A stretch of DNA of 64,000 nucleotides from Aplysia californica (lineage: Eukaryota). Positions 39,209 to 64,000 of the stretch are shown here, piece by piece. Location: assembly GCF_000002075.1 (NCBI RefSeq), contig NW_004797574.1, positions 633,329 through 697,328 on the forward strand, given 5' to 3'. A model generated the notes under the pieces. It saw only the letters and a program-made list of their open reading frames with translations. It was not told the DNA's origin and ran no database searches. The translations under genes and the position numbers were made by a program. Each line of letters starts with the position of its first letter. The stretch's first letter is position 1.

Positions 39209-41643
39209 AACTATACTATGTAGTAGCATACATATTGCGCTGCCTATAGGCCTACAGCTCTTGGTTGTAAAATAGTGTCAGCAATTCTAAGAGGTTAATC
39301 ATATTATACAAGAAGATTTACAACTACGTTGTGTCCCAAACCCAAAAGAGAAAAACTAATCAACATAATACATGCACAAAACAAATTTAAATGTCAATTT
39401 CAAGAAGAAAAACTTAGCGTCCTTGCATCGTAATATTAACACGATATGCTATAAGCCTAAGGGCCCATGTCCACTGCGACGGACTCCAACCGACCCGATT
39501 CCATCCGTTTCTCGGAGAGTCGGTAGTTGAAATGGAGCACCGTTTATTTACTAAGAAATCAGTGAAACGTATGTTTGGCTGTGTCAACAGACATGACACG
39601 ACACGCCCCGACAAAAGACGTGTCGGTTTGAAAGCCGCCTGCTCAATTTTAGCCGGGCCGGGTCGTGACTCGAGAGCCATAGGTCCCGTCGGAGCTAAAA
39701 TCAAATTCTAATTCTGAGTTCGGATTAAAATTCTAATGTCATATTCGTAATCAGCGCCTCAAAATTAGCAAAATATATGCGCAAACCACCTGGTTTAAAT
39801 GCAAATTAACAATTTTACCAATGTTCCTTAAAAAAAACCCCCCATTAATTTCTTATTCCCGCCTTGGGTTCATTAACATCGATTATTTATAGCCCTGTAC
39901 CGAGGACACAGCCTTGTGACACAGTGTGTGGAATACACTGGTGGACACACAAGACAAAAACAAAACCCGACCGATTTTCTTCCTCCCGGTTGAAAATCGG
40001 GCCGTGTCCATCTTAGAGGACACGTAGGGTTATACTCTCGTCTATTCACTCGTCCTAATGAGATTATTATTATGTACCTTTAAACGAGTTTTACAAATCT
40101 CGGCTTTATTTGGCCTATGCTTCTCCCCCCCCCCTNNNNNNNNNNNNNNNNNNNNNNNNNNNNNNNNNNNNNNNNNNNNNNNNNNNNNNNNNNNNNNNNN
40201 NNNNNNNNNNNNNNNNNNNNNNNNNNNNNNNNNNNNNNNNNNNNNNNNNNNNNNNNNNNNNNNNNNNNNNNNNNNNNNNNNNNNNNNNNNNNNNNNNNNN
40301 NNNNNNNNNNNNNNNNNNNNNNNNNNNNNNNNNNNNNNNNNNNNNNNNNNNNNNNNNNNNNNNNNNNNNNNNNNNNNNNNNNNNNNNNNNNNNNNNNNNN
40401 NNNNNNNNNNNNNNNNNNNNNNNNNNNNNNNNNNNNNNNNNNNNNNNNNNNNNNNNNNNNNNNNNNNNNNNNNNNNNNNNNNNNNNNNNNNNNNNNNNNN
40501 NNNNNNNNNNNNNNNNNNNNNNNNNNNNNNNNNNNNNNNNNNNNNNNNNNNNNNNNNNNNNNNNNNNNNNNNNNNNNNNNNNNNNNNNNNNNNNNNNNNN
40601 NNNNNNNNNNNNNNNNNNNNNNNNNNNNNNNNNNNNNNNNNNNNNNNNNNNNNNNNNNNNNNNNNNNNNNNNNNNACGCACACACACCCTGCTTCTTCTA
40701 TATGACATTGCAACAGTTTTTCATGGTCGACAATAAGTTCGACTCTGTGACTGCTGTTCCTCTTAGTCTCACGACCAGTTCCTAAAACTTTTTGTCACTC
40801 TTAATCCTTTCTTCTCACTAACCGCTACCGTCCTTTCTTGGTCTCTTGACATTATTGATCACCTATTAATATTATTTCATCGTCAAAGGGGATAATAAAC
40901 CAAAATAACCGACATTAGTTTTGGTGCCTACAATTAATAGCGGCTCGCATAATGCTTCCAAGAAAGTTGAAATTGTTTCAGAATGCTATCAGGTCTGCTG
41001 AGGTAAAAATAGATAGTAAAACGAATATAGAGCTTGTTTTTGTGGGAATTTGCGCTGTACAAGCGCTATTTGATCATTTTAGAACACTCTCGTGTTGCTT
41101 TGAAGGATTTTTTTTCCTTACTACTTAATTTTTTAATTTCAAAACCAGCTTTAAAAAATCGGAAGTAAAATAGGCAAATAAAATTAAGCGTATCTAGGAC
41201 CCCCCCTCCCCCCACACACACACATTCAACAAAAAATTGTGTCTTGTCAGTTCAAACACCATTCTGAAATGGCACTTTTTTGCAGGCCTTGCAAAGATTG
41301 TGTAGTAGAGAATCTTTGGGCCTACAACAAGGAGATTAAAAGTAGTTCTAAACTCCTTGACGTATAGTCGAAAAAAGAATTCCTAATGTTTACGTCACTA
41401 TAGCCATTACCACTGATTAACGTGTACGTATGTTTAGCCGTGTTCACTTGATTTATTTAATTCTAAATTATTTTTACAATTAAAATAATTTCGATAAAAC
41501 AAATTATGTTAAAGTCATTTTGTACAAGCAAAAGTCGTTTTGTAAAATATAAATTAAAAAATATTCCGTAGATATAGTCACGCTCATCATGAGATCTTGT
41601 GGACATTATTCCTGTTGATGTCGGAGTAGGAGGACCCCTCAAA

Positions 41644-41646
41644 ATG
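41644..41646 (+). CDS. VPS26: Probable VPS26 exon 1, coding part is the ATG only
   Basis: CAAAATG|GTACAC; exon 2 begins with Ser in phase 0, so an ATG|GT exon is required; this is the best candidate seen but the donor is weak. Confidence 0.55.
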
Positions 41647-46234: not shown

Positions 46235-46378
46235 AGCTTTTTTGGCTTTGGGCAGAGTGCTGAGATTGACATAGTTCTTGATGGGCAGGAGAACAGAAGG
46301 ACAGCTGAAATCAAGACAGAAGATGGGAAAAAGGAGAAATATTATCTCTACTTCGATGGTGAAACGGTTTCAGGAAAG
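46235..46378 (+). CDS. VPS26: VPS26 exon 2
   Basis: SFFGFGQSAEIDIVLDGQENRRTAEIKTEDGKKEKYYLYFDGETVSGK, VPS26B-like N-terminus. Confidence 0.96.
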
Positions 46379-47486: not shown

Positions 47487-47562
47487 GTGAATGTAACTTT
47501 AAAAAAGAGCGGAAGCAAGTTGGAGCATCAAGGCATCAAAATAGAATTCATAGGACAAATAG
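47487..47562 (+). CDS. VPS26: VPS26 exon 3
   Basis: VNVTLKKSGSKLEHQGIKIEFIGQI; CAG acceptor, GTGAGT donor. Confidence 0.96.
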
Positions 47563-48743: not shown

Positions 48744-48900
48744 AACTGTATTACGATAGAGGCAATCATCATGAATTCACATCATTGGTCAAAGAACTGG
48801 CGAGACCGGGGGACCTTACTCAGAACACCAGCTACAATTTTGAATTTTCACAAGTGGAGAAACCATATGAATCTTACACAGGAGCCAATGTCAGATTACG
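48744..48900 (+). CDS. VPS26: VPS26 exon 4
   Basis: (E)LYYDRGNHHEFTSLVKELARPGDLTQNTSYNFEFSQVEKPYESYTGANVRL(R). Confidence 0.96.
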
Positions 48901-49599: not shown

Positions 49600-49764
49600 G
49601 TATTTCCTGAGGGTGACGATAGTGAAGCGCATCTCGGACACGGTGAAGGAACAAGACATTGTGGTGCACACCCTGTCCCAGTACCCAGAGATGAACTCCA
49701 GCATCAAGATGGAGGTGGGCATCGAGGACTGTCTGCACATTGAATTTGAATACAACAAATCCAA
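49600..49764 (+). CDS. VPS26: VPS26 exon 5
   Basis: YFLRVTIVKRISDTVKEQDIVVHTLSQYPEMNSSIKMEVGIEDCLHIEFEYNKS(K). Confidence 0.96.
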
Positions 49765-50530: not shown

Positions 50531-50637
50531 GTACCATTTAAAAGACGTTATAGTCGGCAAGATATATTTTCTCCTGGTAAGGATTAAGATTCGGTATATG
50601 GAGCTGGCTATAGTGAGAAGGGAGACGACCGGGGCAG
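50531..50637 (+). CDS. VPS26: VPS26 alternative exon 6A (mutually exclusive, divergent form)
   Basis: YHLKDVIVGKIYFLLVRIKIRYMELAIVRRETTGA; 107 nt, pyrimidine tract with AAG acceptor, CAG|GTAAAT donor, same phases (2,1) as 6B. Confidence 0.85.
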
Positions 50638-51918
50638 GTAAATAAAACAAACCGAACAAGCACAGAGTAGATAGGATTTTTGAGACCTTATTTGTTTTGT
50701 TTTTTTGTCTGTGCATTATTTTTTGTTATGAATGTGTGTATGCCTGCCTTCTAGCAGTGCTCGGTGTTGTTATGGATATTATCGTCATCTCTTTCCTATC
50801 GTCTCTGTTTTCCTGGCCATACCTAAGTGTATAAGTGTATCTGTGTGCAGCTTGTCTGTGTTAGGATAGTCGGTAAAGTTGTTTGGTGTTTTCAGTTTGA
50901 TCTGTGTTTGGGAATCACTGTCTCTGAGGTATATGTATGGACCCTTTGTTGTCCCTCGCTGTTATGTTATCTTTTCTTGTTCTTTTTTTCAGTTCTCTCT
51001 GTTTGCTCATTTTTCGGGGGGGGTGTCTGGTTCTTTTTGGTTTTTACAATTTAAATGATTTGTTACTTTGTTTTTAGTTCATATTTTTATCCAATGTTGT
51101 TCAGTGTTCTCTTTTAGTGTCTTCATCATTTTTTATGTGTATGTTATTATCTCTAATTTTTTTTCTTTCTTTTTTTTGTTCGTTCGTTCTTTTCTCTGTC
51201 TTCGGCCTATTTCTTTAGGTCATATCCGGGTCTTCTTTTCATTTTTCTCCCCCCCGTCTCTCACTTATTTTATGGTTGCTCAGTGTCTGTTCCAAGATGG
51301 AGAACTAAACAGGGGAGTAATTGGAAACATTTGCTGGAGAAATCAATGTGAATATTTGACAGTTTTCCATGGCTGGTGAAGCCCTAGTATTCTCTGTGGT
51401 CCATGAGAATCAGAGAAGGAAAACAAGTGGGCGACAAATTCAGAAGTTTAATTTGTTTGAAAGGTGTTACATTTCTTTGGTTGGCTTAATCGTTCTGTGT
51501 CGTGGAAGGTATGTACAATGATTATTATTTTTTTAGCTTTTGAGCAGGGGGTTGAAATAGAGGAACGGTCTGACCAGCAAATACTGAGAGAACATAAATG
51601 TACTGCTGTGTACTTTATCGCGGGCAGTATTGCATAGAGTCGTAAGTCATTTTTAGCAACCTTTGAGATACCTCTGTATGCAACACTGCCCGCGGTATGT
51701 GGATCTCATTTTCTTTGATTTCTTTGTGTTTGAAAGTGCATCCTTGACTTCTTCTTCGTCTTTACTGTTTTTCATTTACATGTTCACTGTATGAGCGATG
51801 TGTGTTAGTCATCTTTTCATGTTTTTTTGGGTTTTTTTTCCTTTTCTTTTTCACTGTTCACTATATATATATTTTTGCGTTGTTTCCCCCCCCTCCCCGT
51901 ATCACTTTGGTGTTTCAG

Positions 51919-52025
51919 ATATCATTTAAAAGATGTGATAGTGGGTAAGATTTACTTCTTGTTGGTGCGCATCAAAATCAAGCACATGGAGCTGCAGGTG
52001 ATAAAGCGGGAGACTACTGGAACAG
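51919..52025 (+). CDS. VPS26: VPS26 alternative exon 6B (mutually exclusive, canonical form)
   Basis: YHLKDVIVGKIYFLLVRIKIKHMELQVIKRETTGT; 107 nt, TTTCAG acceptor, CAG|GTACAT donor. Confidence 0.93.
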
Positions 52026-52630
52026 GTACATTCTCTCTCACAGGTACACACTCACACACACATACACACGCACACCTGCTGAGGCCTACACACTGGCGGC
52101 ACGCACGTACAGGGCTTACTTCTTGTAGTGGGCTTGGCGTCTGGCCTTGGAAGGAGTTTCTCCCCCCCCCCTTCCCCATTTACCCCTNNNNNNNNNNNNN
52201 NNNNNNNNNNNNNNNNNNNNNNNNNNNNNNNNNNNNNNNNNNNNNNNNNNNNNNNNNNNNNNNNNNNNNNNNNNNNNNNNNNNNNNNNNNNNNNNNNNNN
52301 NNNNNNNNNNNNNNNNNNNNNNNNNNNNNNNNNNNNNNNNNNNNNNNNNNNNNNNNNNNGCCCCCTCCCTTCATCACTCCCCTCCCACTCCCTTTCTTCT
52401 CTCCCCCTCCCCTCCCCTAACCCTCCCATGTTGCTAACACTCCACCCCGTACACTGATGCAGGTAGTGGTTCCTTCAATGGAACTTTTTTAAAAACATTT
52501 TTTTATCTTCTCGTTTTGATTTTTTCCTCCCTTGCCTGTATAGTCTGTGGATGTTTTCTCATTTTTGCTTTGTTTGCCTTTTTCTGGTGCTCTGTGTGTC
52601 TTTGATATTGGCTGTGTGTGTCTTCTGCTA

Positions 52631-52802
52631 CAGTCGAACCTGCTCTAACGGCCACCAGTCCAAAACTGCAATCTCCTGTACAAACATCACTTCCCACTTT
52701 ACACCCTTTTCATTTTTTTTTCTATATTATAAGACGTTCACCTGTCTAAGATGGCTACTTTTCTCCTTAACAATGGGTGGCCATCTGGCACAATTTCGAC
52801 TG
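52631..52802. mobile_element. Short deleted family C-related MITE
   Basis: TA|CAGTCGAA...TTCGACTG|TA with GGCCACC sub-terminal motifs. Confidence 0.7.
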
Positions 52803-55800
52803 TATTTGTGCATTTTGCCCGTAAACTTTTTGTTGTTTAAAAATTTTTTTTTACTAACTCTGGAGGATCTCAAGTCTCCTGAAATTTTAGAATGGAATTA
52901 CTGCTGATAATTCAACGTCTGTGCCCTTCTGACGACCTGGAAAGTACTTTTGATGAGATTTAACTTTTGTTTCTTATCTGGGTGTAATTGATGCTGGAGA
53001 AGTGTATTATTTTTATTTTCCGTCGTTTATTAGCTCTTGTCGGAAGAAGTTAGAAAAGTGACAGAAACTGAGCATGGATATCGAGTTCACCATAAGGGAG
53101 TCAATTTTTAGTTTTCAGTTAAACATATATAAATAGTAAGAGTATCTTTTGTTGTGGCATATGAAAGATAAGGGACACTACTTTCTTGTTGATGACGTGG
53201 ATTTGTATCAATGTTGTTATGCTCTAACCAGGTAACTGATCTCTTGAAAATCGTTCAACTCGCCAAAAAGAAAATAACACTAACTGTTGGGATTGAAAGG
53301 ATGATAGAGGACAACAGTTCTTTTATGCTATTTATAGTGCATGCTGACTCCTCTTGAGGATCAGCTGATTGATAATAGCTTTAGAACAAAAGAACTATTG
53401 GCTTATTTCTTCCACTTTATGGTTAGAGCAAAATGACATAATGTCATGGGTAAGTCTGTTGCACTGTGGGTTGAAGACTCAACCTGGCCGGGAAATGAAT
53501 ATGAAGATAAGGACTCTAGTAGCAGTGACAAGTGTGAAGAGGTAGTTATTAAAGTTCAGCTTTGTGGAAATGTCTTCCTGAAATATAGCGGTCTTTGCAG
53601 GTGGTTGGAATGTGCTGCTGGTAGGATCTTTTTATTTTCTTCTCCTTTTTCTTTTTTGCTCCTCTACTCCTCCTCTGTAGTTTCTCTCTGTCGGTCTTAC
53701 TTTCCCCCCGTACTTATGACAATTGTTGTTCTGATGTGTTTCTCCTTACTCAAACAAACGAACCAATAAGTAGCAGTCTTTCTACCGATTGTCTTCCAGG
53801 ATATAGTAGAAAGGCTCGTTACGGTAAACAATTTTTTGTATTCACTGTTCCGTTATAGTTAATTTCTCTTGTCTGCTGGAACTGCTCTGCAACCTTTTGC
53901 AAATACTAGTGGCTACGAAGAACTTGCCTTTGCTGTGCACATCATAGTAACTGAAGACTGAGCATGTGATCTGTACACACAATAACATCTGCTCGTAATC
54001 AGAAGAGCATTTCTCTGTGTTGATTTGAACAACCTTCGTTAGTTTCCCCCAATTTCTGTTGCGCTGTGTTTTTTTGACTTTGTGCTTTTCTGTTTCTTTC
54101 TTTTGGTTTTGCTGTTATTTTTGTTTCCTTTTTAATTTTTGTGTGTGTGTATGTTCTGTGGAATATTTATCCGAGTTTTTCTCAGGTGATTCGAACTATG
54201 TAGAGTATTGAAGTTGTAATTTTTCTTATAAAATGAGCAAGTAAAATGAGATCTCTGCATTTTCTAGATGAATATCATCTTATCCGATCTATGATTTTAG
54301 TCGAGTGTGAGATATTTAATCCCTTTGCTCCTCTTCTACTCACAAACTGTACTTCTCCCGCATGAGGGTGTTTTGTCAGCTATTTTTGATATTGAAATAC
54401 ATGCACTAATTTAACGTCCTTTCTACGACAAAGAAGCATAAATCTGGGTTTGTTGACTAAGTTTTTCACTTAAATAGGTGTGATTTCGAGATGGGGAAGA
54501 CTAATTTTGATTGAGTGAAACTGTCGAATATCAGTAGTGGTGTACCCCTCAACTCTCAGCACGGGTTGGCCTTGACTTATGGGAGCAAGGAGCTTGCCTC
54601 TGAACTTGAATATTCTTAACTGGGTCAGTGGGACTGTTACAAACAATAGGGGGTTGAAGTTTCTGTCTTTTAAATTTAACTGATCATTGTTTTTTTTGGT
54701 GGTTTTTTTTTTGGGAGGGGGGGGGGGTAAAACAGTTTTAGAAATTATTTAGGTCTGTCGAAATTATCCGTTTTAGTAGAGCAGTGAAGTTCCTTGCTGT
54801 GGTTAAGTGTGTCAACCGTAAGGTGCCCTTGGTGGGAGTTAAGCTTGCCTTGTGGTATAGTTCCTGCTTGAGATTATCCATCTTGTGCTGGTTAGATTGT
54901 AAGAAGCTTTTGTGAACTGCTGGGCCAAGGCCAGGGGCAAAATTCGTGTCATGCGGACATGGTTAATTCACGTTCCCTGGCTCCTCTTTCCTACCTGTCA
55001 GGCCCTGTAATGTTGTATTAGGCTGTAGTGTCTCATTGCTTCTCTGTGGATGGTCGGAGGGTGCTACTGGTAGGTCCCACTTCTTTGTGAACCCCACTGC
55101 TGTTTCTATCTATCTTGCTTGTTCCCAGCACTAAATGATAGTTATTGCGTTGATGTGCTTTTCTTTGTTCAAACTCTTTATTTCTTTCCAACCCGTCTTC
55201 TGTACTGGGGGAAGGCTGCTAAGGTCTTTTATATTTCCTTTGACTGTAGTTATTCATTGTCATTTTGTAAAAGTTTAACGCCAATATCGACACTGCAGAG
55301 TGGATGACTCTGGTTTTCTTCCTCAACTGGGCATATTCTTTTACTTTATCGTCTGATATCTATAATATAACATCATATTTAAAATGTTTTGTTTTACTTG
55401 AGGTAACAATTTCTGCTACAATTTGTTTGGCTATTCTTACTTTACTCTTTTTTCTGTTAATTATTCGGTAGCAGAATGGATATATTCCTTTGATATATGT
55501 TTGGAACTTTATTTTTAAAGTGAAGAAACCAGAACGGGAATTTTGAAATTTTACTTTTATTTCAAATCTTATGAAAATGTACAGACAACAGCACAGAGTA
55601 TTTAAGAGATGAGTTTTCAAAGTTATGGTTCTTAATGATCGTTTATTTTGTTAAACTTCATCTTGACCTAAACCATAACTACTACTGACTGAAAGATATC
55701 CTTTCCATTCTGAGCAAAAAGCAAGAATTTTGAGAATCTGATTTCCAATTAAGTGTTAGTTTTTATGTTTCATCTAATCATGACACTTACGTTTTGGTTA

Positions 55801-57188
55801 TTGTGATTTCACTGAGATTTCGGACTATGCATGGAAAAATAATAAGACTGTTGTCCATCGTTTTTACTTTATCATGAAGGCACATACTTTTCAAAAGAGA
55901 TCAGTCTAACTTCCAAATTTTGAAGTTCTGTTATGTGCCACCAGTAAAAGTAACATGTTTGTTTTCTAATATCAAGCTAGAACATGGGTTTGGTATTTAT
56001 ATATTTGCTTGAGAACAAGTTATATGACTTGAAAGACAATGTGATGGAGAGAACATGTCATTTAGCAGACAGGAAAAACATCTATACGGAAGAATACTAC
56101 GTTATATAACTTGAATCATCTTGATTTAGGAGCTCTTTCATGAAAACAGAATGCTACTGCAAGGTTCTCTTCCTTGTGGAGCATTTGTGAGTCTCTCCCC
56201 CCTCCCCCCCATTGTTTATAAGATTTACAGTGAGTTTTCTTGGAAAATCTTTTCCATTCTCCCTGAGCAATTCTCCTTGTGGTACATCTTTTTTGGTTCT
56301 TTTCTTTGAAGGTCAGGTAGATTCCGTACTTTCAGGTAAACTTTTTTTTTCTGAGTTGACTTTTTTTCCCCCGAAAGTAACCATTTTTTTTTGGTCAGCT
56401 CACAGTGTTAAGGTTCATTTGAAGTGACTTTGGAGCATTTTCTAAACTTGATTCAATAAAAAGTTTGATTCGCTGCTTTTGTTAAACTCTCTTCCATGTC
56501 TTTTATAATATCTTATATTTATGTTTCGATAACTTTGCTAGAACCACTCTCTCACTTTTTCCTGCTATTTCCTTGATTTTTAAGTTCTAGTTCTCTTATT
56601 GCAGTTGTCTGCATTTTTCTTGCTCATTATTGACACGAATAAAATGGTGAATTGGATCAGAAGTGGGATATTTTTCATGTCTTGTAAGGGAGAGACACGG
56701 AATCTGAAGAACACATTATCATCACTTGATTTAAAAAAAAAAGATTCATTATACTATCAAGAAAGGTTTCACGACTAAATTGTGTCAAAACGACACAGTC
56801 AGTCGTAAGAAAGGGACACTACTCTTGATAAAAGTTAAAATACTATTAAGGAAAGAGATTTATTTCTGTTGTCCAGTGGACCAGTTCAACTTGCATATTT
56901 TCTTGAATGATATGTCAGTATGGCTTATCAACTTACGGAAACATATTCGTCTAAGAGGTACTGTTCACATACGTCAAATTTTCAGATATTGGTGTTACAG
57001 TATATGATTGGAATACCTGTGGTTATTTTGCTTGCATTAAACATATTTTGTGGAAACTATATCTTTTCAATAAGAGTCTTAATTGTCATTTTTAGTTGTC
57101 ATTTCTTCTTTTAAAACATTGAAATGCCTTGTCAGTTCCTATGGAAATGAAACCATCTGGTTGTTAAAACTGTCTTGTTTGGTTTCAG

Positions 57189-57257
57189 GTCCAAACACAT
57201 TTAACGAGAATGAGACAATAGCCAAATACGAGATAATGGACGGAGCTCCTGTCAGAG
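57189..57257 (+). CDS. VPS26: VPS26 exon 7
   Basis: (G)PNTFNENETIAKYEIMDGAPVR(G). Confidence 0.96.
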
Positions 57258-58266: not shown

Positions 58267-58409
58267 GCGAGTCCATTCCCATCCGTCTGTTCCTGAGCGG
58301 CTACGAGCTGACCCCCACCATGAGAGACATCAACAAAAAATTCTCTGTGAGATATTACCTCAACTTGGTGCTGGTGGACGAGGAGGAGAGGAGATACTTT
58401 AAACAACAG
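58267..58409 (+). CDS. VPS26: VPS26 exon 8
   Basis: ESIPIRLFLSGYELTPTMRDINKKFSVRYYLNLVLVDEEERRYFKQQ. Confidence 0.96.
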
Positions 58410-61860: not shown

Positions 61861-62061
61861 GAGATCACCATCTTCCGGAGAGCGGACAAAGTGAGGAAGA
61901 ACTACCAGGCGGCGTTGTCACATCACAACCCTTCCTTACTGTCCGACGGGAGCAGTGCCCGAGCAGCGCAGCAGCAGCAGCAGCAACAGCAGGAACGACA
62001 ACAGAACGAAGAGGCCGAGGAGGACGAAAAGGAGGATGAAAATGACGAAGAGGAGAAATGA
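61861..62061 (+). CDS. VPS26: VPS26 exon 9 (last coding exon, poly-Q and acidic tail)
   Basis: EITIFRRADK...QQQQQQQQERQQNEEAEEDEKEDENDEEEK*; CCCAG acceptor in phase 0. Confidence 0.93.
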   Translation, partial: EITIFRRADKVRKNYQAALSHHNPSLLSDGSSARAAQQQQQQQQERQQNEEAEEDEKEDENDEEEK

Positions 62062-64000
62062 TACCAATGTCGAGTTGTTTGAATGAATGCTCAAGAGTGA
62101 TTTTTGTGTAGATTGATTTTTGAATGGGAGCAGGTCCCGTCGAGGGGATAGAGATACTCAAATGCTTTTCTAGATATTGGGTTTATTTGTGCACTCACAA
62201 ATTGGAAACTATTGTATGCCTTGTGTATCCACATGGCTTCAGCATGTGAGAGGGTTTTTTTATGGAGGGGTTGTTGGCTTATTTATTTTTTTTAACTAGT
62301 AGCTTGTATAAGAATTCAAATACCATCTCTTTAATCAAATCAGTTGAATGATATGAGTTCAAATCTAGTGGATGGGAAAGCCATGGGCATGTGGGAAGAG
62401 AGAAGAAGTTCACGATTCACACACCAATTTTCATGACTTTGTTTGGGTGCTACTACTTGGCTTAGCTCTACGATTTTGCTACTCTTGAGAGTTCAGCTTT
62501 TATTAGCCAAAATGAAGGCGTGTTTTCCTAACGAGATTGACATAAGACATCTTCAAGGGTGCACGTCTAGAAAATGTCAAATATCCATGCAACTTTGTGG
62601 CTAACGAAGAAGTCTGTGATCAAATTGAGGATGGAGTGCGAAAGATGAACTATTTGTGGTGTCTCGGGTGTCGAGTGGGAGATTTGTTCAGGCAGGTCTA
62701 GAACGACGGTCGGACAACAGTAGTCATTGGTAGGTGGACACCGCTGTCTGTATATAAGTCTGATCATGATGTGTGTGAGTGTGACCGAAACGTTTGAAAA
62801 CTGCTTAAAATGCTGCGTGGTGGATCGGACAGTGGGGAGCGTCTGTGGAGAAGGAATGTTGTTCTTGCCTTGTGTTCTGACTAGCGTTTTGTTGTAGGTA
62901 GAGATTAGTTTTGCTTCTTTTGACCTCTTCACTGCTGTGTGCGTGTTTATCCGTACACATCTTTATCAAAACGGATTCAAAGCTTTTAAAAAAAATCTGA
63001 TTGAATTTTATTTGATTGAAAATTTTTTATTAAAAAAAAAAATAAAGGTATTTATGGGATGTGGTAGGAGAAAATGTAATCATTTTGTGGCTTGCGCAGT
63101 GCTTCAGTGTCCGGGTAAAGTGGAAACATTTATTACATTGCTTTTAGTTCTTTTGAACAGACATGTTATCATGGTCCTACTTCATATAAAGAGAAACAGT
63201 TCAGCAGTGAAGAAGTTGAAGTCGAAGGTAGACAACTGTTGTGATTTTGTTGTATGTGTGTGTGGGTGGGTGATTTGCTCTTGAAATGGTCGGCGAACAA
63301 AATGCAAAAATGTGGATGTATACGGAGGGCGTTGCCTAAACCACGTCCAACAAACTTGTGTTCTGTCAACTTGTGCTCTAGAGATGCTGGCATAGCGTCT
63401 GCACTGATGGGGCCTCCTGATTTATCCATGTACATACCTTCAGGTGCATTTTATGGAATGTATGTCACAGAAACATAATTTGATTAGGGGTTTTTGATTG
63501 CTACTTCCTTGATATGTTACTCTAGTTTTGTGGACTGTATACTATAGCATGTACTCAATAATTCCGTACGCACTGCTGCGTGCTGCAGTGAAGATCGAGG
63601 GCGGATCTTTTCAGAAAATATGAGAGTCCTGTGTGTTCGGGTCTGCCATCTTGTAAACATGTCATTATTTATGTCATGTTATTAACAGACTACTCAAATG
63701 TTGAGGATTATAATGTGTGGCTCACAGAGTTTTCTGTGGTATTTGGGAGGGAGGAGAAAGAAGAAAAAAAAAAGGTCTTTAAAAATAAGTTTTGTTTTGC
63801 GAGCTTGAGACTTGTGTGTCGTGTCCAAGTGTTTGTGGCAGCGAGCTGGTGTGGACTATGAATGGACGGACACGGTGTGAGCGTGTGGTATGTGGGCGGC
63901 TGCTTGGCTGATGCTGTTGTACAATTTTTGTAATATTTAATGATTCATTTGTCTTTGAAAAGCTTTGAGGAGTTCTTCTTATGTGAGCAGAAATATAATG

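What the first reader, a model, noticed from the sequence alone, without database searches (positions are those of the whole stretch)
50531..52025. Retromer subunit VPS26 carries a duplicated, mutually exclusive exon pair (6A/6B)
Seen: two 107-nt exons with identical phases and intact splice sites, 1.28 kb apart, encode the same VPS26 segment. The first 20 full codons give identical protein (YHLKDVIVGKIYFLLVRIKI), yet 15 of the 20 differ synonymously, and the flanking introns are unrelated. The last 15 residues hold all 7 differences: RYMELAIVRRETTGA (6A) vs KHMELQVIKRETTGT (6B). Including both exons gives TAA at 51927-51929; skipping both gives TAA at 57202-57204. Known: the segment lies in the C-terminal lobe of the arrestin fold, and vertebrates diversify retromer with paralogues VPS26A and VPS26B, which also differ in this stretch. 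Inference: an old duplication under purifying selection lets one gene make two retromer variants by splicing. I do not recall this being described, but I could not search.
Basis: partly seen in the sequence, partly recalled or inferred. Interest (0 to 1): 0.9.

Follow-up and report, generated by a model that had tools for sequence, protein, structure and literature searches.

The report
Ancient swap exons in retromer VPS26
The sea hare's only VPS26 gene (a core part of the retromer sorting machine) holds two interchangeable copies of exon 6, and molluscs, a lamp shell and a ribbon worm have kept the pair; gene catalogues list both protein versions, but I found no paper on them.

Summary

- **The pair.** Exons 6A (50531-50637) and 6B (51919-52025) are each 107 nt, in the same phase, with AG/GT splice sites. 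The first 20 residues are identical despite 15 synonymous codon changes. The last 15 residues differ at 7 positions.
- **Gene and species.** The gene is the single VPS26 gene of Aplysia californica.
- **Both exons are used.** Spliced transcript contigs from two studies join exon 5-6A-7. Another run's contig, identical to RefSeq isoform X2, joins exon 5-6B-7.
- **Exclusivity.** Using both exons or neither gives an early stop in all seven genomes I checked.
- **Conservation.** The pair sits in the same order in five unnamed assemblies and in the brachiopod Lingula. RefSeq X1/X2 isoforms of Haliotis, Babylonia, Ruditapes and Mytilus differ only in this stretch. The Lineus pair also differs only inside the exon-6 segment. 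Synonymous sites are saturated, yet the 6A peptide is identical from Aplysia to bivalves.

This is an ancient lophotrochozoan mutually exclusive exon pair: a new member of a known kind, present in catalogues but apparently undescribed. What the swap does and where each form is used remain untested. This scan has noted similar old exon pairs in other Aplysia genes, but none in VPS26.

The parts
41622..41646 (+). VPS26 exon 1 (partial 5' end; ATG at 41644-41646)
   Evidence: Transcript contig L019 maps here at 100% identity, and the junction was resolved by GT-AG.
46235..46378 (+). VPS26 exon 2
   Evidence: L019 mapping; Pfam Vps26 hit.
47487..47562 (+). VPS26 exon 3
   Evidence: L019 mapping. 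Its last letters appear as the loose end of the X11 and X13 contigs before exon 4.
48744..48900 (+). VPS26 exon 4
   Evidence: L019 mapping; junction 48899/49599 (cut +1) in the X11 and X13 contigs.
49600..49764 (+). VPS26 exon 5, the shared donor for 6A and 6B (AA|gtgagt)
   Evidence: Joined to 6A in X11 and in one raw read of X21. Joined to 6B in L019.
50531..50637 (+). Exon 6A: the alternative copy, tail RYMELAIVRRETTGA, weak aag acceptor
   Evidence: Sequence. Spliced 5-6A-7 in the contigs of X11 and X13. The peptide is identical in L008, L009 and L012 and in Nucella, Babylonia, Pomacea, Tegillarca and Mytilus trossulus.
51919..52025 (+). Exon 6B: the copy closest to other animals' VPS26, tail KHMELQVIKRETTGT, strong tttcag acceptor
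   Evidence: Sequence. Spliced 5-6B-7 in L019, which equals XP_005101984.1 isoform X2.
51927..51929 (+). TAA met if 6A and 6B are both included
   Evidence: A stop falls at the same codon in all seven genomes checked.
57189..57257 (+). VPS26 exon 7, the shared acceptor; encodes the EIMDGAPVRG stretch
   Evidence: Its first letters follow 6A as the loose end in X11 and X13. It is joined to 6B in L019.
57202..57204 (+). TAA met if both exon-6 copies are skipped
58267..58409 (+). VPS26 exon 8
61861..62644 (+). VPS26 exon 9 (stop codon 62059-62061, then 3' UTR to at least 62644)

Best explanation
Exons 6A and 6B are an old tandem exon duplication used as a mutually exclusive pair. Every productive VPS26 mRNA carries exactly one of them, so the single VPS26 gene of Aplysia californica makes two 354-residue proteins.

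Shown:
- The two proteins differ at 7 residues, protein positions 203-217, which correspond to human VPS26A 205-219.
- Both mRNA forms exist.
- Both copies are kept with almost no amino-acid change across lophotrochozoan phyla.

Inferred:
- Exclusivity is enforced at least by the reading frame. Because 107 is not a multiple of 3, including both or neither creates an early stop, and such mRNAs should be removed by nonsense-mediated decay.
- The choice between the copies is probably set by competition between a weak 6A acceptor and a strong 6B acceptor for the one exon-5 donor, under trans-acting regulators.
- The swap changes a surface of the C-terminal arrestin lobe next to the VPS35-binding loop. 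The three positions that always separate the types are Tyr/His, Ala/Gln and Val/Ile, spaced i, i+4, i+6. The result would be two retromer variants, a splicing counterpart of the vertebrate VPS26A/VPS26B genes.
For: - **Anatomy.** Equal length, phase and splice sites.
- **One locus.** A whole-genome search finds a single VPS26 locus.
- **6A in mRNA.** X11 has a 2004-nt contig joining exons 4-5-6A with no mismatches, and exon-7 letters follow directly. X13, from another study, shows the same 5-6A and 6A-7 links. One raw poly(A) read in X21 crosses 49764/50531.
- **6B in mRNA.** The intron-less contig L019 of SRR385812 maps to exons 1-5, 6B, 7-9 and encodes exactly RefSeq isoform X2.
- **Frame.** Both-in and both-out give early stops in 7 of 7 genomes.
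- **Same layout elsewhere.** The order exon 5, 6A type, 6B type, exon 7, with 107-nt exons and AG/GT sites, is found in L008, L009, L010, L011/L012, L015 and Lingula L020.
- **Isoform pairs.** Equal-length RefSeq X1/X2 pairs of Haliotis (3 species), Babylonia, Ruditapes and Mytilus trossulus differ only at positions 203-217. The Lineus longissimus pair differs at six positions, all inside the exon-6 segment.
- **Selection.** Synonymous differences are saturated (pS 0.54-1.14). Non-synonymous differences stay between 0 and 0.12, and the 6A peptide is 100% identical in species whose exons 4 and 5 are only 87-94% identical.
- **Diagnostic residues.** Tyr/His, Ala/Gln and Val/Ile hold in every pair seen.
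Against: - No count of isoform ratios and no tissue information. The two raw-read runs gave only 14 and 4 reads.
- The absence of both-in or both-out mRNAs rests on assembled contigs, which drop rare forms.
- No conserved intron element or convincing RNA pairing was found that would explain the choice.
- GCATG motifs are only weakly enriched upstream of 6B, and Aplysia has none within 250 nt of either exon.
- A 107-nt tree is unresolved, so a single origin of the 6A type across phyla rests on three shared residues. Tyr and Ala also occur in single-exon species (L014, L016, copepods).
- The structural reading is untested. Both predicted models were unusable in this lobe.
Confidence: 0.92

Rival explanations
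1. The pair mainly serves dosage control. The cell tunes VPS26 level by diverting pre-mRNA into both-in or both-out forms that are destroyed by nonsense-mediated decay, and the 7-residue difference is incidental.
For: Both-in and both-out forms carry early stops in all seven genomes. The weak 6A acceptors (aag, gag, gag, tag) leave room for skipping.
Against: Dosage control needs neither a second coding copy nor its strict amino-acid conservation. The 6A tail is identical from Aplysia to bivalves, and three type-specific residues are fixed in every pair. No both-in or both-out transcript was seen, though contigs can miss rare forms.
Confidence: 0.05
2. One copy is a little-used or decaying duplicate, and its appearance in transcripts is splicing noise.
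For: 6A has a poor acceptor in Aplysia and two other species. RefSeq lists only the 6B form for Lingula, Patella vulgata, Gigantopelta and others.
Against: 6A is the form in the assembled transcripts of two independent studies. It stays open, stays 107 nt and is nearly unchanged in protein while synonymous sites are saturated. It is an annotated isoform in at least seven species.
Confidence: 0.02
3. The two exons belong to two gene copies or to an assembly duplication rather than to one transcription unit.
For: Babylonia isoform X3 and a second Bradybaena model lie on other contigs or loci, so extra VPS26 copies do exist in some snails.
Against: In Aplysia all VPS26 exon matches lie in this one locus. 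Both transcript forms share exons 4, 5 and 7 at 100% identity. The same tandem layout is seen in independent assemblies of six other species.
Confidence: 0.01

Closest known systems
Tandem-duplicated mutually exclusive exons in general (for example the human and Drosophila sets in Hatje et al. 2017, PMC5740500; textbook cases such as SNAP25 5a/5b and PKM 9/10, cited from my own knowledge)
   Same: Neighbouring homologous exons of equal length and phase. Each has its own splice sites, one is used per mRNA, and the frame breaks if both or neither are used.
   Different: The gene. That paper's main text does not mention VPS26 or retromer, and two full-text searches found no paper on a VPS26 pair. 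In the taxa I could check, the pair is confined to lophotrochozoans.
Vertebrate paralogues VPS26A and VPS26B
   Same: Two retromer versions that are identical over the first 20 residues of this segment and differ only in the following 15 (alignments). This is the stretch the exon swap changes.
   Different: The vertebrate versions arose by gene duplication and also differ elsewhere, notably in the C-terminal tail that sets SNX3-cargo binding (PMC8635440). Here only 7 residues change and the tail is shared.
Other old lophotrochozoan exon pairs noted by this scan in the same genome (MEK exon 8, Sar1, Argonaute, PLC-beta4 and others)
   Same: Same genome and same pattern: a pair kept across molluscs and other spiralian phyla, listed in catalogues, with no paper found.
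   Different: They are different genes and I did not check those notes. One of them uses U2/U12 incompatibility, which does not apply here.
Docking-site/selector RNA pairing systems (Dscam, 14-3-3 xi; from my own knowledge)
   Same: They also ensure that a single exon is chosen from a tandem set.
   Different: No conserved intron block or convincing complementary pair was found in seven species. This was not shown and not excluded.

Membership tests
Mutually exclusive exon pair from tandem exon duplication | Adjacent homologous exons of the same length and phase | tested here: met
   107 nt each, phase 2 in and phase 1 out, 28 of 35 residues identical, 1281 nt apart.
Mutually exclusive exon pair from tandem exon duplication | Each copy has usable splice sites | tested here: met
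   AG and GT flank both copies in seven species. The 6A acceptors are often weak: aag, gag, gag, tag.
Mutually exclusive exon pair from tandem exon duplication | Mature mRNAs carry one copy or the other | tested here: met
   5-6A-7 in the X11 and X13 contigs. 5-6B-7 in L019. Equal-length X1/X2 isoforms in eight other species, namely three Haliotis, Babylonia, Ruditapes, Mytilus trossulus and Lineus as RefSeq pairs, plus the two Patella caerulea models. Rare both-in or both-out forms are not excluded.
Mutually exclusive exon pair from tandem exon duplication | Using both or neither destroys the reading frame | tested here: met
   Early stops in 7 of 7 genomes. Decay of such mRNAs is inferred, not measured.
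Mutually exclusive exon pair from tandem exon duplication | Both copies are under purifying selection in several lineages | tested here: met
   pS 0.54-1.14 against pN 0-0.12. The 6A peptide is identical across gastropods and bivalves.
Mutually exclusive exon pair from tandem exon duplication | The choice is regulated by tissue, stage or condition | not tested
   Only 14 and 4 raw reads were laid. The tissue of each run is not known to me.
MXE enforced by steric hindrance (intron too short) | Intron between the copies below about 60 nt | tested here: not met
   The intron is 454 to 2004 nt in the seven species, 1281 nt in the window.
MXE enforced by U2/U12 spliceosome incompatibility | One flanking intron has U12-type donor consensus | tested here: not met
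   The donors are gtgagt, gtaaat and gtacat. None is [AG]TATCC.
MXE enforced by competing RNA pairing (docking/selector) | Conserved complementary intron elements | tested here: inconclusive
   No intron conservation between species. Only weak, AT-rich inverted repeats in the window. My duplex scan was unsuitable and timed out.
VPS26 family (Pfam PF03643, arrestin-like retromer subunit) | Match to the family profile over the gene | tested here: met
   Exon-by-exon Pfam hits above the cut-off. The encoded protein equals XP_005101984.1, VPS26B-like. PDB matches to VPS26A and VPS26B.

The most novel reading that the evidence does not exclude
Lophotrochozoans have run two biochemically distinct retromers from one gene since before molluscs, brachiopods and nemerteans split. 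The swapped strand (Tyr/His, Ala/Gln, Val/Ile on one face, beside the VPS35-binding loop) would retune binding of an adaptor, a cargo or VPS35. The cell type would choose the form, for example neurons versus other tissues. This would be a splicing solution to the problem vertebrates solved with VPS26A and VPS26B, and it would mark this 15-residue stretch as a specificity-determining site of VPS26 in all animals.
Probability: 0.4. Interest if true: 0.75.

Novelty: new member of a known kind. Interest (0 to 1): 0.6.

Why it matters
- Retromer is a central endosomal sorting machine, and its failure is linked to neurodegeneration. How its VPS26 subunit sets specificity is only partly understood.
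- This is a natural experiment. Two versions of one short strand have each been held almost unchanged across phyla that, from general knowledge, separated more than 500 million years ago.
- The same 15 residues are where human VPS26A and VPS26B differ, while the 20 residues before them are identical. This points to a small surface worth testing for partner selectivity.
- Aplysia neurons offer a tractable system for testing it.
- The finding also flags annotation errors. The gene models of Tegillarca, Mya and Nucella string both copies into one protein, and Lingula's second isoform is missing.

Tried and rejected
- **Exon tree.** A maximum-likelihood tree of the 14 exon-6 sequences is unresolved because 107 saturated sites carry too little signal. 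I give no tree-based claim of one origin.
- **Intron conservation.** Pairwise blastn of the whole exon 5-7 interval between six species aligned only the exons. The flanks show no shared motif.
- **RNA pairing.** RNA.duplexfold on whole introns gives global pairings that mean nothing, and it timed out. The repeat finder gave only weak AT-rich pairs plus one local 34-nt hairpin.
- **RBFOX lead.** GCATG lies within 250 nt upstream of 6B in 5 of 7 species (6 sites seen, about 2.6 expected) but not in Aplysia or L009. The result is inconclusive.
- **Conserved frame-shifted stop.** The stop falls at the same codon because Leu-3 of 6B is TTA, CTA or TTG in all seven species. Four of the six Leu codons would do this, so it is not significant.
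- **Structure.** The AlphaFold2 model from the single sequence had pLDDT 34. The model from a 53-row alignment had pLDDT about 30 over the C-lobe. Neither is usable.
- **Literature on residues.** Searches for residue-level data on positions 205-214 and on the L197S/R199E VPS26B mutants found nothing. One guessed PMC id was not held.
- **Exon-5 search.** A search with the exon-5 open frame returned only genomic exon fragments and insect genes that lack this intron.
- **Failed look-ups.** Two returned no DNA because the files were too large. The accession of L010 was found in no paper, so L008-L015 remain unnamed.
- I sent no joined exon model to any search. The profile search used alignment A2, where each exon is its own row beside a copepod protein.

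Full report
**1. Observation.**
- The window holds two 107-nt segments, 50531-50637 and 51919-52025. Each is preceded by AG and followed by GT.
- Read as 1 nt + 35 codons + 1 nt, both are open.
- The first 20 residues are identical, although 15 of the 20 codons differ, all synonymously. The last 15 residues differ at 7 positions: RYMELAIVRRETTGA against KHMELQVIKRETTGT. In total 36 of 107 nt differ.
- Only the exon bodies align with each other; the flanking introns do not.
- The codon split by the upstream junction reads Lys with either exon.
- Including both exons gives TAA at 51927-51929. Skipping both gives TAA at 57202-57204.

**2. Gene and organism.**
- Pfam Vps26 matches the surrounding exons, and a whole-genome search finds them in one locus only.
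- A profile search returned a 354-residue protein named VPS26B-like isoform X2 of Aplysia californica, XP_005101984.1.
- Its transcript contig maps at 100% identity to nine exons of the window. The duplicated exon is the sixth.
- The gene is therefore the single VPS26 gene of the sea hare.
- I sent no joined exon model to any search. The profile was built from separate exon rows beside a copepod protein.

**3. Are both exons used?**
- Exon 6A: contigs of two runs from two different studies lie on exons 4, 5 and 6A with no mismatches and the introns removed. Beyond 6A they continue with the first letters of exon 7. One raw poly(A) read of a third study crosses 49764/50531.
- Exon 6B: contig L019 of SRR385812 is intron-less and joins exon 5 to 51919 and 52025 to 57189.
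- Neither contig holds both copies.
- The raw-read runs were too thin (14 and 4 reads) for ratios, and I do not know the tissues.

**4. Conservation.**
- Searching with the 6A open frame found about ten genomic fragments. They carry an identical 6A peptide but different intron-coded flanks.
- Fetching their contigs showed the order exon 5, 6A type, 6B type, exon 7 in L008, L009, L010, L011/L012 and L015. Every exon copy is 107 nt with AG/GT sites.
- Named proteins then placed the pair taxonomically:
  - RefSeq X1/X2 isoforms of equal length differ only at positions 203-217 in Haliotis rubra, H. cracherodii/rufescens, Babylonia areolata, Ruditapes philippinarum and Mytilus trossulus.
  - Patella caerulea has models of both types.
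  - The models of Tegillarca granosa, Mya arenaria and Nucella lapillus wrongly string both copies in series. This at least shows that both copies are in those genomes.
- The nemertean Lineus longissimus has X1/X2 isoforms with the same type-specific changes.
- The brachiopod Lingula anatina is annotated with the 6B form only. Its gene nevertheless holds an intact 107-nt 6A-type exon 580 nt upstream of 6B.
- In every pair the types differ by Tyr/His at exon residue 22, Ala/Gln at 26 and Val/Ile at 28.

**5. Selection.**
- Between the six species compared at the DNA level, synonymous sites are saturated in all exons (pS 0.54-1.14 in the two exon-6 copies).
- Non-synonymous differences in 6A and 6B stay between 0 and 0.12.
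- The 6A peptide is 100% identical in species whose exons 4 and 5 are only 87-94% identical.
- Introns share nothing.
- Both copies are therefore held by strong purifying selection on the protein, which requires that both are translated.

**6. How it works.**
- Shown: the frame rule. Both-in and both-out give early stops in all seven genomes.
- Inferred: nonsense-mediated decay removes those forms.
- The short-intron mechanism is excluded by intron lengths, and the U2/U12 mechanism by the donor sequences.
- No docking/selector pairing or conserved intron element was found, but at this divergence that is weak evidence.
- 6A has a weak acceptor in Aplysia (aag) and in three other species (gag, gag, tag). 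6B always has a good pyrimidine tract with cag or tag.
- This fits a regulated 6A competing with a default 6B for the strong exon-5 donor.

**7. What the swap changes.**
- The segment aligns to residues 185-219 of human VPS26A, in the C-terminal arrestin lobe.
- Exon 7, right after it, encodes the EIMDGAPVRG stretch. From my own knowledge, this is the VPS35-binding loop.
- The invariant residues of a 53-protein alignment include Met205, Glu206, Glu213, Thr215 and Gly216. The variable ones are exactly the swapped positions.
- The three type-specific positions are spaced i, i+4, i+6, so if this is a strand they face one side. That is inference only, because both of my models were unusable in this lobe.
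- Human VPS26A and mouse VPS26B differ in these same 15 residues and nowhere in the preceding 20. Vertebrates and lophotrochozoans thus diversify the same small stretch by different genetic means.

**8. Novelty.**
- Mutually exclusive exons are a well-known kind.
- Two full-text searches found no paper linking VPS26 to such exons, and the human MXE survey does not mention it.
- NCBI's automatic annotation already lists the isoforms in several molluscs and in Lineus.
- This scan has reported several other old lophotrochozoan exon pairs in the same genome, in other genes.
- I therefore rate this a new member of a known kind, with solid evidence and moderate surprise.

**9. Limits.**
- The masked stretch 52188-52359, 163 nt downstream of 6B, was left alone.
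- The unnamed assemblies L008-L015 could not be assigned to species.

Noticed in passing
P0350 (Tegillarca granosa), P0358 (Mya arenaria), P0360 (Nucella lapillus): Deposited gene models read 6A, some intron and 6B in series as one protein (392-673 residues). These are likely annotation errors caused by the exon pair.
   Followed up: partly
L020:5984-6090 (Lingula anatina, LFEI02000092.1): An intact 6A-type exon that the RefSeq model XP_013390024.1 does not use. The brachiopod probably has an unannotated second isoform.
   Followed up: partly
P0121 (257 aa, unnamed source): One open frame holds three near-identical tandem copies of the end of exon 5 plus the exon-6 segment of a distant VPS26. 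It could be a recent triple exon array or an assembly artefact in some other eukaryote.
   Followed up: no
P0455 (Babylonia areolata X3) and P0486 (Bradybaena similaris): Further VPS26 models lie on another contig or locus in these snails. Babylonia X3 carries a 6A-like tail and EYNKCK, so some gastropods may also have a second VPS26 gene.
   Followed up: no
P0181/P0192 against P0189, P0013, P0043 (copepod-like proteins): Copepod-type VPS26 sequences come with either RYMEVAIIK...GS or RHMEVAIIK...GA in this stretch. I could not tell whether these are different species or another exon pair.
   Followed up: no
window:51616-51697: A 34-nt inverted repeat (79% complementary, 14-nt loop) lies inside the 6A-6B intron, about 220 nt upstream of 6B. 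It has no counterpart in the other species.
   Followed up: no
window:52188-52359: A run of N starts 163 nt downstream of the 6B donor, just after a CA-rich microsatellite.
   Followed up: no
G000:C235:110820-110951 (-), locus L007: A weak Pfam Vps26 hit (33.5 bits, profile 217-262) on another contig has no similarity to this gene's exons. It may be the distant VPS26C/DSCR3 relative.
   Followed up: no
L014 and L016 (metagenome scaffolds): Compact VPS26 genes with tiny introns have a single exon-6 segment carrying Tyr at position 22 (KYMELAIIK, KYMELCIVRR). Tyr-22 alone therefore does not mark the 6A type.
   Followed up: partly
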